From IMG/VR virus record IMGVR_UViG_3300032322_002561, positions 62,001 to 126,000 of that record: 64,000 bases of DNA; one strand, 5' to 3'. The notes under the pieces were generated by a model. It ran no database searches, was not told the origin of the DNA, and was given only the letters and a program-made list of their open reading frames with translations. Positions 5,504-35,417 of this stretch are shown here, in pieces (within the stretch, counting starts at the first letter, position 1; the number at the start of each line of letters is the position of its first letter). The position numbers were made by a program, and so were the translations under genes.

Positions 5504-5674
5504 TTATTTGCCGTTGAAATACCAGTTGGCTCCGGCGATAGCGAAACAAATGATAGCATTGAGCCACTGTCCAGATCCAAAATAAATCAAGCCACTCATG
5601 ATCATGGCACCAATGATAAACCATGTGATTTGTACTGCGTTGGCAAGATACCACAGTCTAAAACGTTCAAGCAT
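5504..5674 (-). CDS. Small membrane protein
   Basis: Two hydrophobic segments; AAGGA RBS. Confidence 0.6.
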   Translation of the reverse strand: MLERFRLWYLANAVQITWFIIGAMIMSGLIYFGSGQWLNAIICFAIAGANWYFNGK

Positions 5675-6959
5675 GTGCTGTTTCCTTTTCATAGTAAGCA
5701 TACTGACCCCAGGGTGGAATCACAGTAGTATTACCGTGTATGATCCACACTGTGTCAGCATAGTTTTCGTCACCCCACGAACCAAATGGGTAACCGTCGG
5801 TGAATACCACCAAGCGTTTGGGTTCGATTTGTTCTTCTTTCAAATAGCTGAATATGCAATCAAAGTCAGTGCCTCCTCCGCCCTTGACTTCGTAGTCACA
5901 GATGGTATCCAAATTATCTGAGTTGTAGGTAGCTGGATTGTAGGTTTGTGTATCAAAGGTAAAGATATGTATCTTGTAGCTCTGGAACTGGTCCATGATG
6001 CCCTGGGTTTCGCTCAAGAAATCCTTGAGCATGCGCTCGTCGATACTACCACTTGCGTCAATACCTATGGCTATGTCAATCAACTCATCATTCTTCATAC
6101 CGGGCATGACAGCATCCATGTGCCAACCACGTCGGCTGGCACGCATCCAGGTAAAGTCCGACTTGATGGTACTTTCCAACTGCATACGCAACAACTCACG
6201 CCAGTTCATCTTGGGTGCGGTCATGTCCTGGATAAGACGCTTGACACCTGCAGGCAAGTTACCTGCACCATCACTGGCAGCCGCTGCCGCTAGGACTGCT
6301 TCTTTGATCTCATCGCGGATCTTTTGGCGTTCTTCGGCTGAAATCTTGGGACGACCTTTGCCCTTGCCATCTTTGTCGTCACCATCGCCTTCGCTTTCGC
6401 CGTCACCCTCGCCATCCAAGTGATCGTCCAAGAGCTTGTCGATGAGATCACTCAAGCTGATTTTTTCTGCATTCTTGTACAGATCGTCGTAGATTTCTTC
6501 CGAACTCATGCCTTCATACTTTGAATCATACAGGCAGGGCACTGACGTGATAAACTCGCCTACTCGATGTTTCTTCAAGTCTGCATTGACCGCAAAGTCG
6601 TTGGCTACATTGAACAGTTGATGATCTCTGTCACCTCGGCGTCCAAAGTGATCATACACGCAGTGAAGCACCTCATGTCCAAACAAGAACTCGATCTCTT
6701 TGGGACGGAGCATGTCAATGAATCTGCTGTTGTAGTAGAAGTTACGACCATCCGTGGCTGCGGTTCCGCACCATTCGTCAGCGTTGACTAACTTGAGTCG
6801 AGTGGCCAGGTTGCCAAAAAATGAAGCACGTAGCAACAATCCTACACGGGCTGTGATCAGCTTTTCACGAACTTCACGATCCAATTTGGGATCCATGGGA
6901 CCAACAAGATCTTTGAACTTGTCTGCTTCTTTTTTGTTTTGTGAAGTTGCTGTGCTCAT
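5667..6959 (-). CDS. DUF2201-type metallopeptidase fused to a vWA domain
   Basis: TAATDG, HEVLH (HExxH), acidic linker, DASGS MIDAS, GGGGTDF, VFTDG. Confidence 0.85.
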   Translation of the reverse strand: MSTATSQNKKEADKFKDLVGPMDPKLDREVREKLITARVGLLLRASFFGNLATRLKLVNADEWCGTAATDGRNFYYNSRFIDMLRPKEIEFLFGHEVLHCVYDHFGRRGDRDHQLFNVANDFAVNADLKKHRVGEFITSVPCLYDSKYEGMSSEEIYDDLYKNAEKISLSDLIDKLLDDHLDGEGDGESEGDGDDKDGKGKGRPKISAEERQKIRDEIKEAVLAAAAASDGAGNLPAGVKRLIQDMTAPKMNWRELLRMQLESTIKSDFTWMRASRRGWHMDAVMPGMKNDELIDIAIGIDASGSIDERMLKDFLSETQGIMDQFQSYKIHIFTFDTQTYNPATYNSDNLDTICDYEVKGGGGTDFDCIFSYLKEEQIEPKRLVVFTDGYPFGSWGDENYADTVWIIHGNTTVIPPWGQYAYYEKETAHA

Positions 6960-20082: not shown

Positions 20083-20158
20083 TGGTGCTGGAGAAAGGAA
20101 TCGAACCCTCGACATCCTGATTACAAATCAGGCGCTCTACCGTCTGAGCTACTCCAGC
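20083..20158 (-). tRNA. tRNA-Thr(UGU)
   Basis: Cloverleaf; CCTGA-TT-TGT-AA-TCAGG; encoded CCA. Confidence 0.95.
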
Positions 20159-20168
20159 ATAAAATTTA

Positions 20169-20381
20169 TTACACAGATGCTTCTTCTTTCACTTCTACTG
20201 CATGTTCTACATAGCCAGGTCTGCATTTTAATAAATCAATGCGACGTTGTATTTTGGCTTTTCGTTTGTTTTGTTGTGTTTTTTCTTTTAGATCAGTCAA
20301 CTGCTTGACGCTGAGACTGATGATTTTGACTTGACCCGACTTGGTATATCCTGGTTTACGACGATTGAGTTTTTTTGCCAT
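20169..20381 (-). CDS. Small basic hypothetical protein
   Basis: 70 aa, Lys/Arg-rich. Confidence 0.6.
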   Translation of the reverse strand: MAKKLNRRKPGYTKSGQVKIISLSVKQLTDLKEKTQQNKRKAKIQRRIDLLKCRPGYVEHAVEVKEEASV

Positions 20382-20398
20382 GATTGTGATCCTGTTTG

Positions 20399-21382
20399 TT
20401 AGATATGCTTACTTATAATTCTGTTCTCAAGGCCAACAAAGTTTAGTAACTGTTCAGCCCAGAGTTGATGTGATTTTTCAGTGGGATGACACGTGGCTTG
20501 ATTGTGATTGAGTGGGTTAGATTTCAACCAAGCCCAGCAAGCATCTGCACGTGTTACCTGATCAATCATGTATTCTCGATAATTGGAAAAGTAACCTTCG
20601 GGATCGTTGAGTCGATTAAAAGCTATACCACTAGCTGCGCCACTGATCAAAATTTGATCCAGTGTAATTGTCTTGTGGTCTTGATTGTTTTTTTCATTGT
20701 GATGGTAATTTATTTCAATCCAGGATTGTAAACTATCAAGCTCACTGTTGGTGGTGCTTGGTAAATCCACGGTAAAATTTCTTCCTACAATCAAGTCACA
20801 AGAAATATTCTCCCTCAGTTTGGCCAGCAGATCATACACAAACTGTTCTTCCTGTTCAAGATATTGCGTGACATCAGTTGGCACAGTTTTGCCCAATGCT
20901 TTATAGAAAGCACTGTTTCTACCGGTTTCTGTCAAGGTGGTGAACACAAATATGCGGTTATATCTAGAAAGATCAATGGGAGGTTTTATTGTGCAATGAC
21001 GAACAAGTTGTGACTCTATGTCTGTATCGGCATGTGCATCTGTGACCAGTTCGGGCCATCCAGGATCACGAATCAAATTGTAGTTTTCCTGAGTCAAAAA
21101 AGGAGTATGGTGTCCCAGTACATAGTTGTACAAGGCACACACAATGTCCAAATTGCCGCCACCGCATTTGCCCCAGTTAAACCAATCAGCATCAAGGTGA
21201 TCTGCAAGTCGCCTGCCATAACATTGTGCCAGCCTTGCATCATAGTCATCTATGTCTTTGTCATGGGCAATGGTACCAAGACTGTCACCAAATGTCCAGG
21301 AATCGCCCACTGATATTACAAGATTAGGACGATCCCGCACCAGTTGCAAGGTCAAATTCTGATGTCTAAACGACGGCATCAT
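20399..21382 (-). CDS. SGNH/GDSL hydrolase-like protein
   Basis: GDSWTFG, GGGN, CHPTEKSHQLWA. Confidence 0.7.
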   Translation of the reverse strand: MMPSFRHQNLTLQLVRDRPNLVISVGDSWTFGDSLGTIAHDKDIDDYDARLAQCYGRRLADHLDADWFNWGKCGGGNLDIVCALYNYVLGHHTPFLTQENYNLIRDPGWPELVTDAHADTDIESQLVRHCTIKPPIDLSRYNRIFVFTTLTETGRNSAFYKALGKTVPTDVTQYLEQEEQFVYDLLAKLRENISCDLIVGRNFTVDLPSTTNSELDSLQSWIEINYHHNEKNNQDHKTITLDQILISGAASGIAFNRLNDPEGYFSNYREYMIDQVTRADACWAWLKSNPLNHNQATCHPTEKSHQLWAEQLLNFVGLENRIISKHI

Positions 21383-21544
21383 TTAGTATTTGAGTCTGGC
21401 CTGTGTGTTAAAAGCTTTAGTAATGCGATGGGCAACACGTCTATGTTCCATGATCTGCCGTGTAGCATGCTCACGTTTTTCGCTTTTTGACCATTGACCG
21501 GCAATGGTACGACTTAATTCACCTGCTGATTGACGTTTTCCCAT
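21383..21544 (-). CDS. Small basic hypothetical protein (53 aa, not in ORF track)
   Basis: MGKRQSAGEL...ARLKY fills the gap between neighbours exactly. Confidence 0.55.
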   Translation of the reverse strand: MGKRQSAGELSRTIAGQWSKSEKREHATRQIMEHRRVAHRITKAFNTQARLKY

Positions 21545-21545
21545 G

Positions 21546-21770
21546 TTAGCGCACCTTGCTCAAGTAATCAACCATGCTGAACTGCCCGCTCTGTACTTCT
21601 TTGAGTGCGTCAATAGGAGTGACCCATGAGTTGGTTTCTCGGGCACGACGTTTCATTTCTCGCAAGCGTTGGCTGGCGGCTATGACCAAGTCATACCGTC
21701 CCGCACCACTCTTTTCAATACAGCGTTCAATATCAATTTCGCCACTGCGGCTTTCAATACGTGTGCTCAT
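21546..21770 (-). CDS. rpoZ: RNA polymerase omega subunit homolog
   Basis: IERCIEK..GRYDLVIAASQRLRE...ALKEV.SG pattern; GGAG RBS. Confidence 0.8.
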   Translation of the reverse strand: MSTRIESRSGEIDIERCIEKSGAGRYDLVIAASQRLREMKRRARETNSWVTPIDALKEVQSGQFSMVDYLSKVR

Positions 21771-21791
21771 GATTTCTCCAATTAAAAGTTT

Positions 21792-21820
21792 ATTATATAA
21801 CAATTTTTTTTGTTTGTCAA
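21792..21820 (-). promoter_or_regulatory. Consensus sigma70 promoter for rpoZ
   Basis: TTGACA-N17-TATAAT. Confidence 0.85.
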
Positions 21821-21898
21821 TGGTGCCCCGGGAAGGATTTGAACCTTCAACAGCTCCCTTCTGAGGAGAGTGCGTCTACCAGATTGCGCCACCGGGGT
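21821..21898 (-). tRNA. tRNA-Leu(CAG), short variable loop
   Basis: CTCTC-CT-CAG-AA-GGGAG; A73-CCA; A1:C72 mismatch. Confidence 0.88.
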
Positions 21899-21904
21899 CG
21901 TCCT

Positions 21905-22498
21905 TTACGTGGCTGTTTGTGTGGTACCATTTCCATTTTTAAAACCGATCACACCACCCTCGTCACGGATGCGTTTGAGCACATCTTCAAACAAGATAGG
22001 TGCGAAATCGGTTTGTTCCACACACACGCAATGATACCTGGTATCAATCACGTCGGTTTGTTTGCCATTGAAACCTGTGTGCATGACACGATTGGCATGC
22101 AGGTGTCCGTGGATGTTGACACCAAAACGTCCCAGACTTTCTGTGTGGATGGGAATATGGCTCAGGATCATTCCGTTCATGACATGATATGCACGCAGTT
22201 CACGGAAGTGCTCGCGATATTCTTCATCACGGAAGATGTCGTGGTTACCACGGATCAAGACCTTGTCACCGTTGAGCCTGCGCATGATGCCCAGAGCTTT
22301 CCTGTTGATCACAACATCGCCCAAGTGATAGACCTTGTCTGTGGGTCCGACACGCTCGTTCCAGGCTTTGACCATGAACTCATCCATTTCGTCGGGATCG
22401 TCCCAAGGTCTCAGCTTGGTCACACCATCGTTACGGGTAAAGCGACATACACCTGCGTGACCAAAGTGCGTGTCGCTGATTAAAAATACTGCTGGCAT
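21905..22498 (-). CDS. Calcineurin-like metallophosphoesterase
   Basis: SDTHFGH, HLGD, GNHD, LSHIP, HGHLH. Confidence 0.88.
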   Translation of the reverse strand: MPAVFLISDTHFGHAGVCRFTRNDGVTKLRPWDDPDEMDEFMVKAWNERVGPTDKVYHLGDVVINRKALGIMRRLNGDKVLIRGNHDIFRDEEYREHFRELRAYHVMNGMILSHIPIHTESLGRFGVNIHGHLHANRVMHTGFNGKQTDVIDTRYHCVCVEQTDFAPILFEDVLKRIRDEGGVIGFKNGNGTTQTAT

Positions 22499-22521
22499 AT
22501 TCGCCTCCTTTCTTATTTAAG

Positions 22522-22598
22522 TGGTACGGATGGAGGGACTCGAACCCTCAAAACTCGGATTTTAAGTCCGATACGTATACCTATTCCGTCACATCCGT
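22522..22598 (-). tRNA. tRNA-Leu(UAA), short variable loop
   Basis: TCGGA-CT-TAA-AA-TCCGA; encoded CCA. Confidence 0.92.
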
Positions 22599-22654
22599 AT
22601 CTAATTCTCGGATTCAACGCAGGCGGATTAGGCCAGACTTTATAGTGTGAATTG

Positions 22655-22728
22655 TGGAGCGGGATAAGGGAATCGAACCCTTGACCGAAGATTGGAAATC
22701 TGCTGTTTTGCCCCTAAACTAATCCCGC
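22655..22728 (-). tRNA. tRNA-Gly(UCC)
   Basis: GCG start, TT-TCC-AA loop, U73-CCA. Confidence 0.93.
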
Positions 22729-22732
22729 AAAA

Positions 22733-23827
22733 TTAGAATGTTTTTGGCAGTTTGATGATAGATCTTTTTTCACCCTGGCGTTTGACATCTAGAGTGGCAC
22801 AGTGTATACCACTGTCCCAGTACAAAAAGTGTCTTTGCTCACACACATGGCAGTCAATACCATGTGTTTTTAAGAATGCGAACAGATCCGGCATGTGTTG
22901 TGCAAATATTACATTGTGTCGATCAATTACCAAGACATTCAAATCAAAACACACCTGTTGGATGTACCCTCTCCAATTTTCTAAATAAGCATCTACCCAA
23001 TCTAGATCATGTCTGTTTTGTGCCTTGGAAAAATCTTTGATGTATTGCTGTCGTGATCGACCTTGACGCACAAACTTTGAAACATCGATCAAGCGTTTGC
23101 CTCGCAATACCAACGGAACCCACTCCACACCTGAATGAATTACAGTTTCGTCATCGATCATGAAAAATCCATGATCGATGTGACCAAAGTTGTTGCCACG
23201 TGCATGAGTATTGGGTACAATGTTGAAGTCAGGTAGATTTCTGCGTATCCAGTCAAGCCCTCTCTGTGTTCCTGGGCCGTTTATGTTTACGATCACACTG
23301 TCTCCAACACTGAACATGGTGGCTGTGTGCCACAACAATCTATCTACTAATTTTTGGCGATACGTGCTGCCGGCCATGTCCACATAGTATAGATCCTGCA
23401 TGGTCAAGTCTGACAGCATAGGTGCAGGTTGACTGACCCAGTTGTAGCCTTGATCAAACAAATTCTGAAAAATTTGATAGTAGCCGAGTCCATCAAAATA
23501 TCTGTCGGTCAAACTGGTGTAAGTCTGCAGTATGGTCGATCCCTGTACCTTGTACTGATCACGGGGGACCACAGGACTCATTGGAAAACTTATCTTGAAT
23601 TCCGGTAGAACTACACCGTTGTCATAGGCATATACCTTGGGTCTATGCACCTTGATATTGCCTTGATGTAAAAATTTTGCCAGATTGTCCAGATCTTGTT
23701 TGGTTTCTTCTAGTATTTGATAAAATCCTTGTGGATTCTTGTCGACAAAAAAAGCAGACACATCACTGGGTTGATAGATATCACCAACTATGACTTCTTG
23801 CAGTGGATCATATTCTGTAAAAATCAT
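22733..23827 (-). CDS. Amidinotransferase (glycine/inosamine amidinotransferase-like)
   Basis: EYDPLQEVIVG, PRD, GHID, NVLVID, GIHCATLD. Confidence 0.85.
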   Translation of the reverse strand: MIFTEYDPLQEVIVGDIYQPSDVSAFFVDKNPQGFYQILEETKQDLDNLAKFLHQGNIKVHRPKVYAYDNGVVLPEFKISFPMSPVVPRDQYKVQGSTILQTYTSLTDRYFDGLGYYQIFQNLFDQGYNWVSQPAPMLSDLTMQDLYYVDMAGSTYRQKLVDRLLWHTATMFSVGDSVIVNINGPGTQRGLDWIRRNLPDFNIVPNTHARGNNFGHIDHGFFMIDDETVIHSGVEWVPLVLRGKRLIDVSKFVRQGRSRQQYIKDFSKAQNRHDLDWVDAYLENWRGYIQQVCFDLNVLVIDRHNVIFAQHMPDLFAFLKTHGIDCHVCEQRHFLYWDSGIHCATLDVKRQGEKRSIIKLPKTF

Positions 23828-24944
23828 GATTTTTTAAATTTTTGTCAAGTGTATCAAAGTAGTCTTGATCCGCATTAAGCGGGATCACAAACTGCGAAGG
23901 TCCCATGGGTGTTCTAACAGCAAGCATAAGGCCAAACTGGTTTTGTACTTGATAGCGATTGTTTTCAAATATGGATCTGGCCTGACACGCTATCTGTTCG
24001 TGTCTTGACAACAACGATTGTTGTTCCAACAATGATAGAAATTCTAAAACACTGACCACTCCTGGTAGACTGAAACTGTAGGTAAATCCGTGTTCCCACC
24101 GAAAGGTCTTGGGCAAACTGTCATGTATGCGTTGATTGTACAGTGTCATGCTCAGTGGATAGTGACCAGCTGTGATTCCCTTGCCCATGGTAAAAATGTC
24201 TGGTTCCACTGGCAAACATTTCCAACCAAAAAAGTTACCAGTTTTGCCACCCCCGGTAAAAATATCATCTATGATAACAATCACATCATGTTGCTTTTGA
24301 ACATAAGCCACACGTTGCCAAAATTCTTCATTGTAAGGCTCAAGACCCCGAGCCCACGAACAGGTTTCTATAACCATACAACACACTGTGTTCCAATCAA
24401 TTGATTCAACATCAAAATCTGTGTTTATTTTTACAAAATTACTGTCAAGATCCAAAGTGTACAGTTTTTGTGTTGGCTTGCTCAAATTCTTGGTCAGCCA
24501 GGTGCTACCATGGTAACTGTTGGCAATGCTCACCACTCGATTACGTTGTAGTTGACCCCGACAGTGATGATATGCACTGGCCAATTTTACAGCACCTTCG
24601 TTGGCATCACTGCCGCTGAGTGCAAAAAAACTTCGGTAACCGCCACTGAGATTGAACAGTTTGTCGGCCAATTCATAGCTGGCGTGATTTATCCTAAGTG
24701 GTTGTGCTGGTCCAAAAAAATTATCGGCTATTTCAGGTTTTGTGCTTTTCAGTCTTTCATGCACCCGATCTAAAAATTCATCATTACCGGTATATCCCAG
24801 TACAAAACAACCATAGTGTAAGTGTGCATCCACAATTTTTTTATCATTATGCACAATGCCATACTTCCAATATTGAGATTCTGTGTGCAAGGTGGTTTGT
24901 TGAGTGCTGTAAATTAAACCCTTGTAATCAGTCGCAGTATTCAT
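23808..24944 (-). CDS. Class III PLP-dependent aminotransferase
   Basis: SGSDANEGAVK, SYHGST, DDIFTGGGKTG, GKGITAG, HGFTY. Confidence 0.88.
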   Translation of the reverse strand: MNTATDYKGLIYSTQQTTLHTESQYWKYGIVHNDKKIVDAHLHYGCFVLGYTGNDEFLDRVHERLKSTKPEIADNFFGPAQPLRINHASYELADKLFNLSGGYRSFFALSGSDANEGAVKLASAYHHCRGQLQRNRVVSIANSYHGSTWLTKNLSKPTQKLYTLDLDSNFVKINTDFDVESIDWNTVCCMVIETCSWARGLEPYNEEFWQRVAYVQKQHDVIVIIDDIFTGGGKTGNFFGWKCLPVEPDIFTMGKGITAGHYPLSMTLYNQRIHDSLPKTFRWEHGFTYSFSLPGVVSVLEFLSLLEQQSLLSRHEQIACQARSIFENNRYQVQNQFGLMLAVRTPMGPSQFVIPLNADQDYFDTLDKNLKNHDFYRI

Positions 24945-25020
24945 GCTGTGTTTCCTTTAGATACTTATAGACTAGATGTGGTTAGATCAAGGTTTTTTAT
25001 GATCTTGATACCAGACCAAC

Positions 25021-25099
25021 TGGTCGGAGTGGAAGGATTCGAACCTTCGGTCTCCTGCTCCCAAAGCAGGCGGATTAGACCAGACTTTCCTACACTCCG
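25021..25099 (-). tRNA. tRNA-Pro(UGG)
   Basis: CCTGC-TT-TGG-GA-GCAGG; encoded CCA. Confidence 0.93.
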
Positions 25100-25109
25100 A
25101 AAAATAAAA

Positions 25110-25505
25110 TTATTTGATGTTTTGCACAGTCTTGACCATGGTCTCCTCAGAGAGATGATCGTGCTTGAACTCTCTCACCGGGTGACCCAACAAGCCGGCA
25201 ATTGAGTTTTTAAAACTAATGCGTTTGTTGTTGTAGTCCCGTATGCGTATGGCTCTTCGACCAATCTCGTCCAAGGGCAACTGTTCTTCAACACCTGATT
25301 TCAATTGCCATTCTAACTCCCAAATGGCATTGTGTATGGCAGTCATGGCATCCACATTGTAGTTGAGTTCAGCACTTTGCGGAAGTTTTGCAAATTGCGC
25401 CTCATACCAGTCTAGTTCTATTTGGTTGGCACCATTGGTGCGTTGGTGTTTGACTCGTGCTATACAAAGCCGGTCGACTAATTCAAGAACCGGTAAAAAT
25501 TCCAT
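25110..25505 (-). CDS. Hypothetical helical protein
   Basis: 131 aa; AAAGGA RBS. Confidence 0.65.
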   Translation of the reverse strand: MEFLPVLELVDRLCIARVKHQRTNGANQIELDWYEAQFAKLPQSAELNYNVDAMTAIHNAIWELEWQLKSGVEEQLPLDEIGRRAIRIRDYNNKRISFKNSIAGLLGHPVREFKHDHLSEETMVKTVQNIK

Positions 25506-25548
25506 GTAGTTCCTTTCTGAAAATGATGAAATTACCTATCACTATCTA

Positions 25549-25622
25549 TGGCGCCGGTCTAAGGAATCGAACCTCAATCCTCGGTTTTGGAGACCGTTGT
25601 AATGCCATTATACTAGACCGAC
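25549..25622 (-). tRNA. tRNA-Trp(CCA)
   Basis: CT-CCA-AA loop; G73-CCA. Confidence 0.93.
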
Positions 25623-25626
25623 TATA

Positions 25627-25704
25627 TGGAGGTGAAGGTTGGATTCGAACCAACGGGGGTAGAGATTTGCAGTCACTTGCCTTGGACCACTCGGCCACTT
25701 CACC
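25627..25704 (-). tRNA. tRNA-Cys(GCA)
   Basis: CT-GCA-AA loop; U73-CCA. Confidence 0.92.
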
Positions 25705-25715
25705 ACAATTAAAAA

Positions 25716-25961
25716 CTATTCTTTGTCGATGTCTTGTTCAGCTCGACGTTCTTGTATGGTTTTTTCACGCCAGGTTTTGCGAGGATTAGCGCACAACAAG
25801 CAATGTGGTCTTCCACAATTCATGACATGGTGTTTGGCATATCTGTGGTATTCTTTTACTGTGATACCGTGCGCCTTGGCAATACGTACTTGTCTGATTT
25901 CAGCATCTCTAGTTTTGCTGATGCGTCGACTGTGTTTGATACGTGTCTGTTCATTGCTCAT
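25716..25961 (-). CDS. Small basic protein with a CGRPHCLLC motif
   Basis: 81 aa; AGGAGG RBS; possible zinc ligands. Confidence 0.7.
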   Translation of the reverse strand: MSNEQTRIKHSRRISKTRDAEIRQVRIAKAHGITVKEYHRYAKHHVMNCGRPHCLLCANPRKTWREKTIQERRAEQDIDKE

Positions 25962-26015
25962 GATTGCCTCCTGACTACGATACTTATGAATACATTAATC
26001 ACTGACATACATTAT

Positions 26016-26089
26016 TGGTTGCGGGACCAGGAATCGAACCTGGGACTCGAGCTTATGAGACTCGCGTTTTACCGCTTCACTATCCCGCG
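26016..26089 (-). tRNA. tRNA-Met(CAU), initiator-like
   Basis: CGCGGGA/TCCCGCA with C1:A72 mismatch; CT-CAT-AA loop. Confidence 0.9.
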
Positions 26090-26107
26090 ATAGCATGGTG
26101 AAGATGT

Positions 26108-26266
26108 TTAACTTGGGATCAATCTTGGCAAATAAGGCACTGATCTAGGCCCGTGAAGTTGTTGTAAAAGTTTTCTAGCTTCTTCGGCAGTTTCAGCCCC
26201 CACTCGGGCCTTGAATTCTTGTCCACCCGGACCTGGCTCTCTGATTGTTGCTTCCCATAATTTCAT
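26108..26266 (-). CDS. Small hypothetical protein (52 aa, not in ORF track)
   Basis: GGGAG RBS; MKLWEATIRE...PRLIPS. Confidence 0.6.
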   Translation of the reverse strand: MKLWEATIREPGPGGQEFKARVGAETAEEARKLLQQLHGPRSVPYLPRLIPS

Positions 26267-26283
26267 ATGAACTCCCATAAAAA

Positions 26284-26358
26284 TGGTACACCGTAGGAGA
26301 ATCGAACTCCTCTTACCTGCGTGAAAGGCGGGTGTCCTAACCGATAGACGAACGGTGC
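26284..26358 (-). tRNA. tRNA-Glu(UUC)
   Basis: CT-TTC-AC loop; encoded CCA. Confidence 0.93.
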
Positions 26359-26366
26359 ATACAACT

Positions 26367-26458
26367 TGGCGGAGACTATTGGATTCGAACCAATGATACA
26401 GATTACTCCATATGACGGTTTAGCAAACCGTTGCCTTCAGCCACTCGGCCAAGTCTCC
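26367..26458 (-). tRNA. tRNA-Ser(GCU)
   Basis: TT-GCT-AA loop, long variable arm, G73-CCA. Confidence 0.94.
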
Positions 26459-26461
26459 ATT

Positions 26462-26666
26462 TATTGTTGAGACCACTGTTGTATGTTTAAGAGACTTCAA
26501 ACGAACCCGTAAAGGTTTGCGCCGTTTTTATACGTCTCTCCCAACCTCATCGTTCACGCAGTATCAGCAGACTGCTATTTCCCAGATCTTGGGCTGACTT
26601 GGCCGGGATGGTTATCTTCCCCAACAGTTGGGATTGCTTACTCTTTCGCTCACAATCTCAACAATA
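26462..26666 (-). ncRNA. Unassigned structured RNA, about 205 nt
   Basis: Perfect 11-bp terminal stem, several internal helices and a possible pseudoknot; abuts tRNA-Ser. Confidence 0.6.
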
Positions 26667-26685
26667 CGCACTCTGTGGAGTGCGT

Positions 26686-26785
26686 TTGCTATCGCTCGAA
26701 TTTTTCGCTCCACAAAAGGAGTTCCATCCTCGAGGCCGCCCGTTTGTGTTAGTTATAGTGTAACACAGGCCCTCGTTGCCTGCAA
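26686..26785 (-). ncRNA. Second unassigned structured RNA candidate
   Basis: GC-rich intergenic stretch with nested stems TGTGTTA/TAACACA, CGAGG/CCTCG, CTCC/GGAG. Confidence 0.4.
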
Positions 26786-26797
26786 CCACTGTGTCAG

Positions 26798-26974
26798 TTA
26801 TTTGTCTTCTTCTGCTAACCGACGAAATTGTTCCTGCGCCCGAATCATTGCGGCCGCACGATCGATCTTGTTCTGAAACAGACGTTGTTTCTGCTCTTCG
26901 GTCAAAAAGGCCGAAATATGGTCATAAGCCTGTTTCACAATTTGATCGTTTAATTTTGTGTAATCAATTGACAT
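26798..26974 (-). CDS. Small hypothetical protein (58 aa, not in ORF track)
   Basis: GAGG RBS; MSIDYTKLND...AEEDK. Confidence 0.55.
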   Translation of the reverse strand: MSIDYTKLNDQIVKQAYDHISAFLTEEQKQRLFQNKIDRAAAMIRAQEQFRRLAEEDK

Positions 26975-26992
26975 CTTTTTCCTCTATAAAAT

Positions 26993-27026
26993 AAAAAACC
27001 CCGGAGTGTTTAATTCCAGGGTCTTT
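26993..27026 (-). terminator. Terminator/attenuator hairpin ahead of the tRNA operon
   Basis: AAAGACCCTGGA...TCCGGGGTTTTTT. Confidence 0.7.
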
Positions 27027-27048
27027 GAATATTGTATGATATTTTATA

Positions 27049-27150
27049 CTATTCACTGCCCTGAATCGGATCTTCACAAATTGCCCATAGCGCCACACTC
27101 CCGCTGAAATTGGGTTGTGGTGCAAGATGTGTTAATTTGTGATTCAACAT
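27049..27150 (-). CDS. Putative leader peptide (33 aa)
   Basis: ATG 6 nt after TATAAT; followed by a terminator. Confidence 0.45.
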   Translation of the reverse strand: MLNHKLTHLAPQPNFSGSVALWAICEDPIQGSE

Positions 27151-27156
27151 AATAGT

Positions 27157-27185
27157 ATTATACGAGAATATTTATACCAGGTCAA
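27157..27185 (-). promoter_or_regulatory. Sigma70 promoter with an embedded TATAAATA late-type motif
   Basis: TTGACC-TGGTATAAATATTCTCG-TATAAT. Confidence 0.8.
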
Positions 27186-27199
27186 CCAATTTGGTCAAC

Positions 27200-27223
27200 A
27201 AAAAAGGCTCCTAAGAGCCTTTT
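27200..27223. terminator. Intrinsic terminator
   Basis: AAAAGGCTC-CTAA-GAGCCTTTT. Confidence 0.8.
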
Positions 27224-27229
27224 ATACTA

Positions 27230-27457
27230 CTAGGCTTGATCCACGAACCGTTTGAGTTCTTCAGCCTTGGCTATGATATCCGTGCTGGACGGAAAATCTG
27301 GCAAGGTAGGGAACTGCAAAGTTTCTCGATTGGCTTCGGTAATCTTGCTGTGATATTCCTGCATTCGTGCTTCGCGATTTTGGAATACGGGTGTGGTCAA
27401 TATTTCATTGGCCATTTTGAGTAGATCCAGACGGATCTCGTAGGGTGTTTTGCTCAT
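27230..27457 (-). CDS. Phage hypothetical protein
   Basis: MSKTPYEIRLDLLKMA...IIAKAEELKRFV; AGGAG RBS. Confidence 0.75.
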   Translation of the reverse strand: MSKTPYEIRLDLLKMANEILTTPVFQNREARMQEYHSKITEANRETLQFPTLPDFPSSTDIIAKAEELKRFVDQA

Positions 27458-27544
27458 GATTACTCCTTTCTGTGTGTGATGTGTGTTAAACACGAGCTTG
27501 TAGTTTTCACTACACATTTACTTATCAAGCCAAATCAAGGTCAT

Positions 27545-27571
27545 AAAAAAAGCTCCCGGAGGAGCTTTTTT
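27545..27571. terminator. Intrinsic terminator
   Basis: AAAAAAAGCTCC-CGGA-GGAGCTTTTTT. Confidence 0.8.
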
Positions 27572-27586
27572 GTTCACTTTTAAAAA

Positions 27587-28327
27587 TTAATTAAAAGTCT
27601 TTGTCAAGCCTACTACCACTGCATTTTTGTAGAGCTTTTGACCGCCTACAGTGTTTGCAGTTTCAAAGGTTGATGTGGTGCCAGTATTGGTAAAATACTT
27701 GACGCTCAAGTCATATGCCTTGGGTAGAGAATAAACAAATCCAGCATTGATGTCGTTGTAATCATATGCCGAGCTGTTGGCCACATTGGTACGACCATAG
27801 TGAGCAACCACAGCTAGATTTTTAACAACAGGAACTGGTAGTTTGCCATCCACTTGTGTATAGTTTGTGCCACGAGCATTGGCTGTACCGAAGTAACCGT
27901 TGCCCAAGGTTTGGCTATACTTGGCAGAAATAATGTCTTTGTAACCTACGCCGACAAAACCTTCATAGGTGTCAAAGTTGCTGCCAGTGGCTGCAGAAGT
28001 GGTTGCACGTGGATAGAAATAGTTGTAGCTACCGATGTCAATCGAGATGCCCTTGAAAATTTCTTTCTTGTAACCAGCATAGAGGTCGCTTTCTACACCT
28101 GCACCGTTGGTATAAACATTGCTGGAAACACTGCTGTTCCAGTTACCAACATAGAAGCCACTCTTGTGTGCATAGTCGATGCCGCCCTGAACTGCAGGAG
28201 CATTTTGGGTTTGGCTAACACCGCGGAAACGGTAGTCGCTGGTCAAACCTAAATTGCCGGTGAGTTGAGCTTGAGCCGAGGCAACAAAGCCAGCGGACAA
28301 GGCTAATGCGATTAATAGTTTTTTCAT
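27587..28327 (-). CDS. TorF/Gcw_chp-family putative outer-membrane porin
   Basis: Signal peptide; SDYRFRGVSQT..PAVQGGID..GFYVGNWNS, ESDLYAGY; near-terminal Phe. Confidence 0.85.
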   Translation of the reverse strand: MKKLLIALALSAGFVASAQAQLTGNLGLTSDYRFRGVSQTQNAPAVQGGIDYAHKSGFYVGNWNSSVSSNVYTNGAGVESDLYAGYKKEIFKGISIDIGSYNYFYPRATTSAATGSNFDTYEGFVGVGYKDIISAKYSQTLGNGYFGTANARGTNYTQVDGKLPVPVVKNLAVVAHYGRTNVANSSAYDYNDINAGFVYSLPKAYDLSVKYFTNTGTTSTFETANTVGGQKLYKNAVVVGLTKTFN

Positions 28328-28402
28328 GCTTGAGATTTCCTTTTAAAAGAATGCTGGGTGATCACCCAACAAGTTATTTAGTGGTTTTCACTGATGGCCA
28401 AC

Positions 28403-28430
28403 AAAAAAGCGACATTTCTGCCGCTTTTTT
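28403..28430. terminator. Intrinsic terminator after the tmRNA
   Basis: AAAAAAGCGACA-TTTC-TGCCGCTTTTTT. Confidence 0.75.
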
Positions 28431-28790
28431 GACTATTTTGGGTAACAAGGCATAGTTGCCCCGGAGATCATGCCGCTAAGGCAAAGACCTCGTCGTTGGC
28501 TGCGTTTGCAGTTATCGTTGTGCTTCTACAACCGGGTGTCCCCAGTCCTAACGGGTTTCGCATTCCCGTGTAGATCCTGTCCATACTTGTTGCCACGTCG
28601 AAACTGTGTCATCCCCACCAAAAAGACCTAGCAATTCTGGATCAATGTGCCAGCTCCAGCTCATGCTGTAATTCCACAAATTCAAGGGTGGAAAACTATC
28701 GGTCCATTGCTCCATAAAAGTCCTTTTGGTGGAGATGCCGGGTTCTGCCCCCGGGTCCGCAACACCTTTCTGTCAAGGCATTAAACTACA
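28431..28790 (-). ncRNA. ssrA: Circularly permuted (two-piece) tmRNA
   Basis: Acceptor piece ending CATCTCC-A-CCA (3' end at 28727) precedes the GGGGATG 5' end (28616); G3:U70 pair; tag ANAANDEVFALAA-stop at 28509..28468; outer ends approximate. Confidence 0.92.
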
Positions 28791-28798
28791 ATTCTTTT

Positions 28799-28828
28799 AT
28801 TGTACTACAAAAAATATTTATTGGTCAA
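28799..28828 (-). promoter_or_regulatory. Promoter for the tmRNA
   Basis: TTGACC-N18-TACAAT with TAAATA in the spacer. Confidence 0.65.
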
Positions 28829-28935
28829 TTAAACAAACCGTATGTCCAACACCATAATTCCAGGCTGAGTTTGTACAGCAACCACATGGCCACCAAGCCT
28901 GTGCTAAAGATTAAAGTTAATTGAGTTTTATTCAT
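28825..28935 (-). CDS. Hydrophobic micropeptide (36 aa)
   Basis: MNKTQLTLIFSTGLVAMWLLYKLSLELWCWTYGLFN. Confidence 0.5.
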   Translation of the reverse strand: MNKTQLTLIFSTGLVAMWLLYKLSLELWCWTYGLFN

Positions 28936-28972
28936 AGATCCGACCCACCACCACGTTTAACGAACGTGGAAA

Positions 28973-29044
28973 CTAGTAAAACACCAACAAGAAAACTGCC
29001 ACCACAACCACAATGCCAATGGCAAAACTGTAGTCTGGTTCCAC
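28973..29044 (-). CDS. Hydrophobic micropeptide (23 aa)
   Basis: GTG start; MEPDYSFAIGIVVVVAVFLLVFY. Confidence 0.45.
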   Translation of the reverse strand: MEPDYSFAIGIVVVVAVFLLVFY

Positions 29045-29045
29045 G

Positions 29046-29138
29046 CTATTTCCCAAACAAGTGTGCTACAATGCCCATGGCCACAAACACTGCGATGGCT
29101 GCAATGGCTGCCCAAGGAAGGTTTTGAAATATTTTCAT
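29046..29138 (-). CDS. Hydrophobic micropeptide (30 aa)
   Basis: MKIFQNLPWAAIAAIAVFVAMGIVAHLFGK; AAGGA RBS, ATGA overlap. Confidence 0.5.
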   Translation of the reverse strand: MKIFQNLPWAAIAAIAVFVAMGIVAHLFGK

Positions 29139-29218
29139 TGTTCGTCCTTGTGTTCGTTAAGCCACATGATGCCATAACACACAACTATGGCCAACAAGGC
29201 AAAAAATATCAGCCACAT
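29135..29218 (-). CDS. Hydrophobic micropeptide (27 aa)
   Basis: MWLIFFALLAIVVCYGIMWLNEHKDEQ. Confidence 0.5.
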   Translation of the reverse strand: MWLIFFALLAIVVCYGIMWLNEHKDEQ

Positions 29219-29219
29219 G

Positions 29220-29390
29220 TTAATTATAACCTTTTATGTTTTTGCCGTCAATCTTGGGATTACCTTTTGCTGCTACATTTTCTAATTGACGTGCTCGATC
29301 TCGTTCGGGCGGTAGCGGGCCGCAACCCAACCTGTCCCACTCTGAATCAGAGTAGTAGTATTTTTCTACGGGTTTTTTGACCTGTTCCAT
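29220..29390 (-). CDS. Small hypothetical protein (56 aa)
   Basis: MEQVKKPVEKYYYSDSEWDRLGCGPLP...; TAAATA upstream. Confidence 0.55.
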   Translation of the reverse strand: MEQVKKPVEKYYYSDSEWDRLGCGPLPPERDRARQLENVAAKGNPKIDGKNIKGYN

Positions 29391-29406
29391 AGCATAGATA
29401 TTTAGT

Positions 29407-29481
29407 TGGTGGGCCTTGAAAGAATTGAACTTTCACTCCATCGATTATGAGTCGATTGCTTTACCATTAAGCTAAAGGCCC
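29407..29481 (-). tRNA. tRNA-Ile2(CAU) (lysidine type); elongator Met not excluded
   Basis: GGGCCTT acceptor stem; ATCGA-CT-CAT-AA-TCGAT; encoded CCA. Confidence 0.88.
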
Positions 29482-33970: not shown

Positions 33971-34423
33971 TTATGCGGCTTCAAAAGTTTCGGCCTGTTC
34001 CTTGGTGTGGAACGGACCTTGATACTGATAGCGTTCTAACAAGATCAGTTTGGGATTGTGTACCAACTTCCAGGTACGATGTTGTTTGACTTGATACCAT
34101 CCGGCTGCATACCATGATTTACTTTTGCGTTCCTTGGTAAACAAAGGCAATCTATACTTGACGTTCCACATGGCATTGAATGTTCGACAGTCGGTATCAA
34201 ATCCGTGTACCTGACGTGCCTTGGCTGGTGTGGCCTTTTCCGCGGGCGAAAATTCAATGTCCAGACTTTTTCTCACCATGGGAATGGTCTTGAATCGTTG
34301 CACACGATTATCAATGCGTATCACATATTCGCCCTTGTCGGCTTCCAGGGCACCAACTTTTTGATCATTTTGTTTAAGGATCCAGTATTGCTTGTCAATC
34401 ACAGGTTTAGCTACTATTTTCAT
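33971..34423 (-). CDS. Hypothetical protein
   Basis: AGGAG RBS before MKIVAKPV. Confidence 0.7.
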   Translation of the reverse strand: MKIVAKPVIDKQYWILKQNDQKVGALEADKGEYVIRIDNRVQRFKTIPMVRKSLDIEFSPAEKATPAKARQVHGFDTDCRTFNAMWNVKYRLPLFTKERKSKSWYAAGWYQVKQHRTWKLVHNPKLILLERYQYQGPFHTKEQAETFEAA

Positions 34424-35417
34424 TGAGTACTCCTTTGTATGTTTCATTCATCCATCGGCCAAAACTTTCAGCCGACTCACTGCACTTGTTTAATTCATAT
34501 TTGCCACAAAACTGCATGAATCGCACACCCACCTGTCCTACATCCTTGTGACTGATCTGTTCACGTATGGCCGCATCCACTGTGGTCTTGACTTCTGCAG
34601 GCTGAGCTGTCAAATCAATCAAGGTCCTGTTGCGTTCATAATCGTCTAGTACTCTATGTTCTACACCGTCGGGATCAGTCCAGCGTTGCAACATCAAGTT
34701 GTTCCAATTGTATCCTTTTTTGTCTCGATCAGCATACGCCTCTTGTAGGCCAACTTTGTTCTTGGTCCCTTTTGTACGCACTCCAGGAAACGCTGAAAAA
34801 ACATTGTCACTCGAGTCGCCTCGCATGCACTTCTCAAAAAGTAGCCACTGTGGGTCCGGAATCGTTTTAGGTTCCTTTGTTTTCTTGTCAATGACTGGTT
34901 TACCCTTGGCATCAAAGATTCCTTCTATGGTGATTAATTCATCGGTGATTCCATTGTACTGCTTGACATTGGGTGCTACTAGTTGAACAAAGTCAGTGTC
35001 ACTTGAAATTACTACATGTTCATCTTGGGGGTGTAGTGCGATCCAGCGAGCAATAATATCGTCGCCTTCTGCGGTAGGGCATCTGATAACGCTACAGTTG
35101 GTCCTATCGCTCAAGTATTTAGTCAGCGCATCATAGGTTTCCCAGAACATCTTGTCTTCTTCTAGTTCGTTTTCTGTGAGTGCTTGCCGGGCCACAGCAC
35201 GGTTGTTTTTGTAAGGCTTGTACATGTCCTTGCGCCACGATCTGCCCTCAAGTGCAAAAACCACGTGATCGGCTTCAAATCTGCGTGCCACTTTGTTGGC
35301 AGCCATTAGCGTAACATGCAAGGCAAAGCCCAGTTTTTCCCAGGTATCAGCCGCACGAAACGCACCGTGTCTGGCACGAAAAAACATGTTGGCTGTGTCT
35401 ATGAGCACATACTTCAT
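34407..35417 (-). CDS. rnh: T4 RNase H-like 5'-3' exonuclease/flap endonuclease
   Basis: LIDTAN, YKNNR, EGDDII, SSDTDFVQL, GDSSDNV..PGV. Confidence 0.88.
   Translation of the reverse strand: MKYVLIDTANMFFRARHGAFRAADTWEKLGFALHVTLMAANKVARRFEADHVVFALEGRSWRKDMYKPYKNNRAVARQALTENELEEDKMFWETYDALTKYLSDRTNCSVIRCPTAEGDDIIARWIALHPQDEHVVISSDTDFVQLVAPNVKQYNGITDELITIEGIFDAKGKPVIDKKTKEPKTIPDPQWLLFEKCMRGDSSDNVFSAFPGVRTKGTKNKVGLQEAYADRDKKGYNWNNLMLQRWTDPDGVEHRVLDDYERNRTLIDLTAQPAEVKTTVDAAIREQISHKDVGQVGVRFMQFCGKYELNKCSESAESFGRWMNETYKGVLNENSS

What the first reader, a model, noticed from the sequence alone, without database searches (positions are those of the whole stretch)
28431..28790. Circularly permuted two-piece tmRNA in a phage
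Seen: on the minus strand the 3' acceptor half (T-arm CCGGG-GGCAGAA-CCCGG, then CATCTCC-A-CCA) comes first. A 110-nt intervening segment closed by ACCAAAAGGAC/GTCTTTTTGGT follows, then the 5' half GGGGATG (G3:U70) and the tag ANAANDEVFALAA. Established: permuted tmRNAs occur in alphaproteobacteria and some beta- and cyanobacterial lineages. The non-canonical T-loop resembles the alpha type, while the ANDExFALAA tag resembles beta types. No smpB is present in the window. Inference: a distinct phage lineage of two-piece tmRNA that supports ribosome rescue or resists host nucleases.
Basis: partly seen in the sequence, partly recalled or inferred. Interest (0 to 1): 0.75.

Follow-up and report, generated by a model that had tools for sequence, protein, structure and literature searches.

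The report
Mosaic two-piece tmRNA in jumbo phage
A giant freshwater phage carries a complete, circularly permuted gene for tmRNA, the RNA that rescues stalled ribosomes and tags unfinished proteins for destruction; phages are already known to carry such genes, but this copy mixes hallmarks of two bacterial lineages, and the same phage also encodes the Clp proteases that read such tags.

Summary
ARAGORN and Rfam (tmRNA_permuted, 107.7 bits, cut-off 47) call a permuted tmRNA on the minus strand. Its order is promoter, acceptor piece, 110-nt intervening segment, coding piece with tag ANAANDEVFALAA, post-tag pseudoknot, terminator. The host genome is a 236-kb IMG/VR jumbo-phage contig from fresh water with no smpB. 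The gene is conserved and syntenic, about 30 kb from polB, in all four related contigs long enough to show it. Helices covary, G3:U70 is invariant, and the tag differs from an ortholog by 7 synonymous and 0 non-synonymous codon changes. So it is a selected, almost certainly functional gene. Twelve of 17 family members pass Rfam's beta_tmRNA cut-off (up to 154 bits; the window scores only 66). Yet the window's T-arm 21-mer is otherwise found in at least 120 bacterial genomes, nearly all alphaproteobacterial. Different segments have different nearest relatives, so the gene is a modular mosaic. Phage two-piece tmRNAs were already described (Buchholz 2022), so the kind is known. No RNA-level evidence was obtainable. 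The same contig encodes ClpX, ClpP (two copies) and a ClpA-like ATPase.

The parts
28799..28828 (-). sigma-70-like promoter: TTGACC (28828-28823), 18-nt spacer, TACAAT (28804-28799); predicted start near 28792
   Evidence: 10 of 12 matches. Relatives have TATAAT at the same distance from the first helix. The RF01850 model itself includes such a promoter.
28727..28792 (-). Acceptor piece, predicted about 66 nt: 5' strands of P2 (28790-28786, 28778-28776, 28764-28758), T-arm (28754-28738), acceptor 3' strand (28737-28731), discriminator A and CCA (28730-28727)
   Evidence: Covariation: P2a 97% paired with 4 of 7 pairs changed on both sides.
28617..28726 (-). Intervening segment, 110 nt, removed during maturation (inferred). 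Its two ends pair and extend the acceptor stem.
   Evidence: All 13 family members have an in-register stem of 11-16 pairs with different sequences. A DNA contig of the source run spans it with no differences.
28400..28616 (-). Coding piece, predicted about 217 nt: acceptor 5' strand GGGGAUG (28616-28610), D-loop analogue (28609-28598), 3' strands of P2 (28597-28569), PK1 region, tag, post-tag pseudoknot, terminator
28532..28568 (-). PK1 region: hairpin CGGG/CCCG (28568-28552) plus a second hairpin (28545-28532) present only in the window, L009 and L059
   Evidence: Alignment A2. First hairpin 96% paired, with 3 of 4 pairs changed on both sides.
28468..28509 (-). Tag reading frame: resume codon GCA 28509, peptide ANAANDEVFALAA, stop UGA 28470-28468
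   Evidence: Window vs L316: 7 synonymous, 0 non-synonymous codon changes.
28432..28462 (-). Post-tag pseudoknot: stem 1 28462-28457 with 28452-28447; stem 2 28456-28453 with 28435-28432; conserved loop CUUGUUACCCAAA
   Evidence: stem 1 92% paired, stem 2 80% paired with 4 of 4 pairs changed on both sides. The same motif is in the RF01850 consensus.
28401..28431 (-). Intrinsic-terminator-like hairpin (13 pairs, GAAA loop) merging into a U run
   Evidence: -16.9 kcal/mol, z -6.8. Every relative has a G+C-rich hairpin plus U run at this place.

Best explanation
This is a functional, self-contained ssrA gene of a roughly 350-kb freshwater jumbo phage, in the circularly permuted form. SHOWN: the sequence has its own promoter-like site and terminator hairpin, and every structural element of a two-piece tmRNA. 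The gene is conserved, syntenic and under structural and coding selection across the phage lineage. INFERRED: one precursor is transcribed. The ends of the intervening segment pair and extend the acceptor stem. Host RNase P cuts 5' of G28616, and host 3' processing leaves or rebuilds CCA at 28727. That would give an acceptor piece of about 66 nt and a coding piece of about 217 nt, held together by the acceptor stem and the P2 helices. Host AlaRS charges it through G3:U70. With host SmpB and EF-Tu it enters stalled ribosomes, translation resumes at GCA 28509, and ANAANDEVFALAA is appended. The -ALAA end then delivers the product to ClpXP or ClpAP, which the phage also encodes. By descent the gene is a divergent member of a beta-type (RF01850-like) family found in viral contigs, assembled from exchangeable modules. 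In this copy the tRNA-like module carries an alphaproteobacterial-type T-arm.
For: Detection. Anatomy and energies. Covariation in 13 sequences: acceptor stem 100% paired with 3 of 7 pairs changed on both sides and G3.U70 in 13 of 13; P2a 97%; PK1 hairpin 96%; post-tag stems 92% and 80%; slid controls 10-64%. The closing stem of the intervening segment is conserved in structure, not sequence, in 13 of 13. The tag is under purifying selection. Synteny: all four polB-relative contigs of 76-149 kb hold a permuted tmRNA 29-37 kb from polB, as in the window. Beta-type scaffold: 12 of 17 family members score 86-154 bits on RF01850, cut-off 84. Genuine alpha genes reach at most 72 bits on that model. 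L316 shares the identical tag and 92% of the pseudoknot. Alpha-type T-arm. Mosaic: and a co-occurring variant in the source run (joint 28609 to 28745). No smpB in this contig, in complete Phosso, or in a 99%-complete relative. ClpX, ClpP x2 and ClpA-like on the same contig.
Against: There is no RNA evidence. The RNA runs held only the conserved T-arm of other organisms, or relatives of the neighbouring gene. Transcription, the cuts at 28616 and 28727, charging and tagging are all unobserved. The window's own copy fails the beta cut-off (66.2 vs 84) and matches the alpha model only over the tRNA-like core, so its subtype rests on relatives. No bacterial RF01850 member was in my genome samples (0 of 151), so the relation to bacterial beta genes rests on the Rfam model alone. 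The contig is about 68% complete, so a phage smpB cannot be excluded. The host is unknown.
Confidence: 0.8

Rival explanations
1. The RNA is a decoy or modulator rather than a rescuer. It soaks up host SmpB, AlaRS or EF-Tu, or competes with host tmRNA, to shut down or redirect host trans-translation during infection.
For: The phage brings no SmpB, so it must compete for the host's. A CDS-less tmRNA-like RNA of mycobacteriophage DS6A inhibits endogenous tmRNA in E. coli (as cited in PMC11915505). The non-canonical T-loop might change partner binding.
Against: The tag frame is intact and evolves as a coding sequence: 7 synonymous vs 0 non-synonymous changes against L316, and stop codons are kept. 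The resume context UAA-N-U/C-GCA-AA is invariant. A pure decoy would not need either.
Confidence: 0.1
2. The gene is of alphaproteobacterial descent, captured from an alpha host, and its beta-model score is mere cross-matching. This was my own working reading until.
For: RF01849 scores 60 bits, above its cut-off of 50. The T-arm is identical to that of at least 120 genomes, nearly all alpha. The nearest isolated phages by polB infect Rhizobiaceae, and Phosso has an alpha-type permuted tmRNA. Alpha genes score 50-72 bits on the beta model. Two relatives (L061, L067) score best on the alpha model. A similar post-tag pseudoknot exists in some alpha genes.
Against: The alpha match covers only model positions 82-172 of 355. 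Syntenic orthologs and most family members pass the beta cut-off by a wide margin. The tag is ANDE-type, not the ANDN of about 100 alpha genes. In a sample not chosen by T-arm, 27 of 34 family members have canonical T-loops. No alpha genome of 401 sampled matches the coding piece.
Confidence: 0.07
3. The locus is not a working phage gene. It is a decaying relic, a fragment left by integration at a host ssrA gene, or host DNA joined in by misassembly.
For: tmRNA genes are common prophage integration sites, and fragments occur in prophages (PMC9004378). The window's copy has the lowest family scores.
Against: Both halves are complete, all helices are intact, and it has its own promoter and terminator. 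It lies in a tRNA cluster inside a 236-kb contig with phage genes on both sides. The source DNA run tiles the locus with identical overlapping contigs at even depth. It is syntenic in four related phage contigs.
Confidence: 0.03

Closest known systems
Two-piece tmRNA of OM43 phage Melnitz and pelagimyophages (Buchholz et al. 2022, PMC9004378)
   Same: A permuted ssrA gene in a lytic T4-like aquatic myophage, with no smpB discussed, placed behind an early promoter. The lineage signal of the RNA does not simply match the host's class.
   Different: Melnitz's gene is reported as alpha-lineage and carries a glutamine riboswitch in its 3' domain. No riboswitch or other Rfam family is found here. 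No GenBank phage matches this gene by blastn. The phage here is a jumbo phage of about 350 kb from fresh water.
Rfam beta_tmRNA (RF01850), two-piece tmRNA of Betaproteobacteria
   Same: Full-length alignment including the promoter, P2, an ANDE-type tag, the post-tag pseudoknot with loop CCUUGUUACC-AA, and the terminator. 12 of 17 relatives pass its cut-off.
   Different: The window scores 66.2, under the cut-off of 84. The T-arm is not the canonical GGUUCGAUUCC. The PK1 region has an extra hairpin, the intervening segment is longer, and the tag has an ANA prefix.
Rfam alpha_tmRNA (RF01849), two-piece tmRNA of Alphaproteobacteria
   Same: The T-arm CCGGG-GGCAGAA-CCCGG and the tRNA-like core; 60 bits against a cut-off of 50.
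   Different: Only model positions 82-172 of 355 align. The tag is not ANDN-type, and the coding piece has no alpha match.
Unannotated permuted tmRNA of Sinorhizobium jumbo phage Phosso (PV764938.1:349596-350198)
   Same: Nearest isolated phage by polB (49.6% identity). Permuted tmRNA (113 bits), ClpX present, no smpB.
   Different: T-loop GGCGGUA and tag ANDNVSTKVALAA, so alpha-like throughout. Its intervening segment is about 400 nt. ARAGORN misses it and the record has no feature there.
Bacillus megaphage G: tmRNA together with ClpXP (PMC12484599)
   Same: A very large phage that encodes both a tmRNA and ClpX/ClpP.
   Different: Gram-positive host and an unrelated tag (AKLNITNNELQVA). ARAGORN reports a 308-bp gene; the paper does not say whether it is permuted.

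Membership tests
Permuted (two-piece) tmRNA, Rfam RF04321 | Covariance-model score at or above the gathering score (47 bits) | tested here: met
   107.7 bits, model positions 1-213 of 213; ARAGORN tmRNA*
Permuted (two-piece) tmRNA, Rfam RF04321 | Gene order: acceptor 3' half with CCA, then intervening segment, then acceptor 5' half followed by the tag frame | tested here: met
   CCA ends at 28727, G1 is at 28616, tag at 28509-28471
Permuted (two-piece) tmRNA, Rfam RF04321 | Alanine identity pair G3:U70 in a 7-bp acceptor stem | tested here: met
   G28614 opposite U28733. Invariant in 13 of 13 relatives while pairs 4-6 covary.
Permuted (two-piece) tmRNA, Rfam RF04321 | Tag reading frame with an alanine resume codon and a hydrophobic C-terminal degron, conserved as a coding sequence | tested here: met
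   ANAANDEVFALAA; 7 synonymous vs 0 non-synonymous codon changes against L316
Permuted (two-piece) tmRNA, Rfam RF04321 | Precursor cut into two RNAs that stay base-paired | not testable with these tools
   No RNA run held this gene. Only the conserved precursor helix is shown.
Permuted (two-piece) tmRNA, Rfam RF04321 | Dedicated partner SmpB available | tested here: not met
   No PF01668 match in the 236-kb contig (about 68% complete) or in four related records plus complete Phosso. It would have to come from the host.
beta_tmRNA, Rfam RF01850 | Score at or above the gathering score (84 bits) | tested here: not met
   Window 66.2 bits, full length. Relatives: 12 of 17 pass, from 85.7 to 154.2 bits.
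beta_tmRNA, Rfam RF01850 | ANDE-type tag and post-tag pseudoknot with loop CCUUGuuACcaAA | tested here: met
   Aligned to the consensus; stems covary
beta_tmRNA, Rfam RF01850 | Canonical T-loop (GGUUCGAUUCC in the consensus) | tested here: not met
   The loop is GGCAGAA. Of 34 family members not chosen by T-arm, 27 are canonical.
alpha_tmRNA, Rfam RF01849 | Score at or above the gathering score (50 bits), over the full model | tested here: inconclusive
   60 bits, but only model positions 82-172 of 355
alpha_tmRNA, Rfam RF01849 | T-arm CCGGG-GGC(A/G)G(A/U)(A/G)-CCCGG | tested here: met
   The same 21-mer is in at least 120 genomes, nearly all Alphaproteobacteria; 20 further alpha genes
alpha_tmRNA, Rfam RF01849 | Tag beginning ANDN, and a coding piece similar to alpha genes | tested here: not met
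   Alpha tags. Only 25-49-nt chance-level matches to the coding piece in 401 alpha genomes.
cyano_tmRNA, Rfam RF01851 | Score at or above the gathering score (70 bits) | tested here: not met
   18.5 bits

The most novel reading that the evidence does not exclude
In this abundant lineage of freshwater jumbo phages the tmRNA gene is a cassette of exchangeable modules: the P2 domain, the tRNA-like domain, PK1, the tag plus pseudoknot, and the intervening segment. The switch of the tRNA-like module from a canonical to an alphaproteobacterial-type T-arm may track the SmpB and processing machinery of the host, that is, host shifts between beta- and alphaproteobacteria. Together with phage-encoded ClpX, ClpP and ClpA, the phage would run its own tag-and-destroy pathway, borrowing only SmpB.
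Probability: 0.15. Interest if true: 0.65.

Novelty: new variant of a known kind. Interest (0 to 1): 0.42.

Why it matters
Phage tmRNAs are widely annotated but none has a demonstrated role. This family offers a natural experiment. Closely related phages (polB 77-93% identical) carry orthologous two-piece tmRNAs that keep the same tag and pseudoknot but differ in the tRNA-like module. That directly poses the question of what the T-arm of tmRNA must match in the cell (SmpB, processing enzymes, modification). The presence of ClpX, ClpP and ClpA in the same genome makes a phage-controlled link between tagging and proteolysis testable. Practically, ARAGORN missed several family members (CCU instead of CCA, or long intervening segments), and the clade-specific Rfam models give misleading subtype calls for mosaics.

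Tried and rejected
1. Alpha descent with the beta score as cross-matching. I held this view. I dropped it when syntenic orthologs scored 112-154 bits on RF01850 and most family members passed it.

2. RNA evidence. Two run searches and one read-laying gave no transcript of this gene. RNA contigs matched only 28725-28763 (T-arm and acceptor of other organisms, running on into unlike sequence) or 28000-28356 (relatives of the neighbouring gene).

3. A post-tag motif specific to beta. My first regex was too strict. A looser one finds a related pseudoknot in at least 11 of 128 alpha genes, so the motif alone does not decide lineage.

4. Something hidden in the intervening segment. No Rfam family is there. 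Its length is within the range of relatives (23-215 nt) and of alpha bacteria (4-151 nt). A 55-aa ORF starts in it but is not conserved.

5. Phage-encoded partners. No SmpB, CCA-adding enzyme or SspB was found.

6. Bacterial donors. No match to the coding piece in 401 alpha-class or 401 phylum-level genomes beyond short fragments or the terminator. No bacterial RF01850 member was in the sample, so bacterial beta genes could not be compared directly.

7. Isolated phages. blastn of this gene and of L316 found none.

8. Host identification failed.

Full report
WHAT IS THERE. The minus strand of 28400-28830 holds a complete permuted tmRNA gene. ARAGORN calls tmRNA* at 28377-28819 with tag ANAANDEVFALAA. 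Rfam's tmRNA_permuted model gives 107.7 bits against a cut-off of 47. A sigma-70-like site (TTGACC, 18 nt, TACAAT) ends seven bases before the first helix. A 13-pair hairpin running into a U tract closes the gene. It is therefore a self-contained transcription unit. It lies among 11 tRNA genes, all on the same strand.

THE GENOME. The window is part of a 236,309-bp linear IMG/VR contig that CheckV rates about 68% complete, which implies a phage of roughly 350 kb. Its family-B DNA polymerase is closest, among isolates, to Sinorhizobium phage Phosso (49.6% identity) and Agrobacterium phage Atu_ph07 (45.8%), then to Rak2-like jumbo phages at about 42%. DNA runs that hold the locus are lake and freshwater metagenomes. 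The lineage is abundant: more than 565 IMG/VR contigs encode a polymerase relative, the best 80 at 75-93% identity.

IS IT A REAL, SELECTED GENE? Pattern scans and synteny brought in 16 close relatives. In a 13-sequence alignment the acceptor stem is paired in every sequence, with changes on both sides at 3 of 7 pairs and G3.U70 invariant. P2a is 97% paired (4 of 7 pairs compensatory), the PK1 hairpin 96% (3 of 4), and the two stems of a post-tag pseudoknot 92% and 80%. Slid-partner controls give 10-64%.

The ends of the intervening segment pair in register with the acceptor stem for 11-16 pairs in all 13 sequences, using different sequences. In the window the whole helix is 20 pairs, z -5.6.

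The tag evolves as a coding sequence. Window vs L316 shows 7 synonymous and no non-synonymous codon changes, with UGA against UAA as stop. Window vs L009 shows 6 synonymous and 2 non-synonymous.

All four polymerase-relative contigs of 76-149 kb hold a permuted tmRNA 29-37 kb from polB, as the window does at about 28 kb. The eight shorter contigs had none, but most do not reach that position.

The source DNA run tiles the locus with identical contigs, including one across the intervening segment. So this is not an assembly artefact.

WHICH KIND OF TWO-PIECE tmRNA? The window fits none of the three clade-specific Rfam models cleanly. The alpha model gives 60 bits (cut-off 50) but only over the tRNA-like core. 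The beta model gives 66.2 bits full length (cut-off 84). The cyano model gives 18.5.

The T-arm 21-mer occurs in at least 120 bacterial genomes, and essentially all named ones are Alphaproteobacteria (Rickettsiales, Holosporales, Geminicoccaceae, Azospirillaceae, Micavibrio). Twenty further alpha genes show the same CCGGG-GGC(A/G)G-type arm with ANDN tags. Genuine alpha genes also score 50-72 bits on the beta model. I therefore first read the gene as alpha-derived.

That reading fell when the syntenic orthologs were scored: L316 154 bits, L318 112 and L317 111.5 on the beta model. Of the relatives found through the alpha-like T-arm itself, nine pass the beta cut-off, at 85.7-138.5 bits. In all, 12 of 17 family members are RF01850 members by Rfam's criterion.

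L316 has the window's tag exactly and 92% of its pseudoknot, yet a canonical T-loop UUCGACU. The consensus of the beta model encodes ANDEHFAMAA and carries the loop CCUUGuuACcaAA found here. In a sample chosen by that loop and not by the T-arm, 27 of 34 viral genes have canonical T-loops and 4 have UGC-type loops. Some of those 4 sit on the window's exact stem and acceptor. Only 3 have GGC-type loops.

MOSAIC STRUCTURE. Segment by segment the window is 96-100% identical to L319 in both strands of P2 and in the D-loop analogue, and 95% in the pseudoknot. It is only 43-64% identical to L319 in the acceptor stem. It is 86-100% identical to L318 in T-arm and acceptor, but about 50% elsewhere. Its PK1 region, with an extra hairpin, is shared only with L009 and L059. 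The source run also contains a variant that matches on both sides of 28609-28745 but differs between them.

The gene is thus assembled from modules that recombine among co-occurring phages. Whether the alpha-type T-arm came by transfer from an alpha-type gene or arose in place cannot be decided here. The exact 21-mer identity favours transfer; the intermediates on the same stem favour change in place.

PARTNERS. No SmpB is encoded in the contig, in the complete Phosso genome, in Atu_ph07, or in three related IMG/VR records, one of them 99% complete. There is also no CCA-adding enzyme or SspB. Some relatives encode CCU, CCC or CCG instead of CCA, so host 3' repair is implied.

The contig does encode ClpX (539 bits, above the equivalog cut-off of 359) and ClpP (314 bits, cut-off 249). 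It also encodes a second divergent ClpP-like protein and a ClpA-like ATPase (797 bits, under the cut-off of 993). ClpX lies 5 kb from the tmRNA in L009's contig, and it is present in Phosso and Atu_ph07. Clp genes are already described for Atu_ph07 (PMC6102473), and a tmRNA plus ClpXP for phage G (PMC12484599). A functional link is my inference.

WHAT IS KNOWN. Permuted tmRNA genes and their three bacterial lineages are long established (as summarised in PMC11915505). Buchholz et al. 2022 (PMC9004378) described the two-piece tmRNA of phage Melnitz. They counted 53 two-piece forms among 133 unique phage tmRNAs, mostly aquatic, and noted a mismatch between RNA lineage and host class. The kind is therefore known. 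What appears new is this freshwater jumbo-phage family, its modular mosaicism, and the alpha-type T-arm on a beta-type scaffold. No GenBank phage matches the gene.

LIMITS. I found no RNA-level evidence. The host is unknown. No bacterial beta-type gene was available for direct comparison (0 of 151 sampled genomes pass RF01850).

Noticed in passing
G000:C1:200925-201569, 203159-203740, 225435-226634, 145039-147315 (same contig, outside the window): The phage encodes ClpP, a second divergent ClpP-like protein, ClpX and a ClpA-like ATPase. These are the proteases that recognise ssrA tags ending in -ALAA.
   Followed up: partly
window 27587-28327 (-): The gene directly downstream of the tmRNA encodes a signal-peptide protein of family Gcw_chp (PF09694, 157 bits). 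L060 has the same neighbour. River and freshwater metatranscriptomes hold contigs 90-95% alike over 28000-28356, from relatives or from a host homolog.
   Followed up: no
window 28548-28715 (-): A 55-aa ORF starts in the intervening segment behind AAGGA (5-nt spacer) and reads across the predicted RNase P site into the coding piece. L058 has a similarly placed ORF with a hydrophobic product, but the other relatives do not, so it is probably chance.
   Followed up: partly
L215:2097-2699 = PV764938.1:349596-350198 (-): Sinorhizobium phage Phosso has a permuted tmRNA (RF04321 113 bits, T-loop GGCGGUA, tag ANDNVSTKVALAA, intervening segment about 400 nt) in a gap with no annotated feature. ARAGORN does not find it.
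   Followed up: yes
L009:7992-8228; L318:1501-1703; L418, L419, L426: Several family members encode CCU, CCC or CCG instead of CCA after the discriminator. ARAGORN missed L009, L318 and L319, so phage permuted tmRNAs are under-called by the usual tool.
   Followed up: partly
L098, L102, L145, L148, L183: The alpha-type T-arm 21-mer also occurs on contigs assigned to Desulfobacter latus and to Elusimicrobia, Saccharibacteria, Verrucomicrobiales and Acidimicrobiia MAGs. These may be phage or alphaproteobacterial DNA that was misbinned. RF04321 found no match in the Desulfobacter genome.
   Followed up: no
window 20083-29481 (-): A cluster of 11 tRNA genes (Thr, Leu x2, Gly, Pro, Trp, Cys, Met x2, Glu, Ser) on one strand, with the tmRNA inside it. 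These are the only tRNA genes in the 236-kb contig.
   Followed up: no
L011, L014, L020, L035 and about 20 other loci: A second group of viral permuted tmRNAs has canonical T-loops and tags such as ANDDVYFEDFALAA. blastn links parts of them to unannotated regions of Alcaligenes, Stenotrophomonas and Pseudomonas phages.
   Followed up: no
window 23808-24944 (-), 5667-6959 (-), 34407-35417 (-): Other genes in the window include a class-III aminotransferase, an HNH endonuclease (phrog_1314) and a 5'-3' exonuclease.
   Followed up: no
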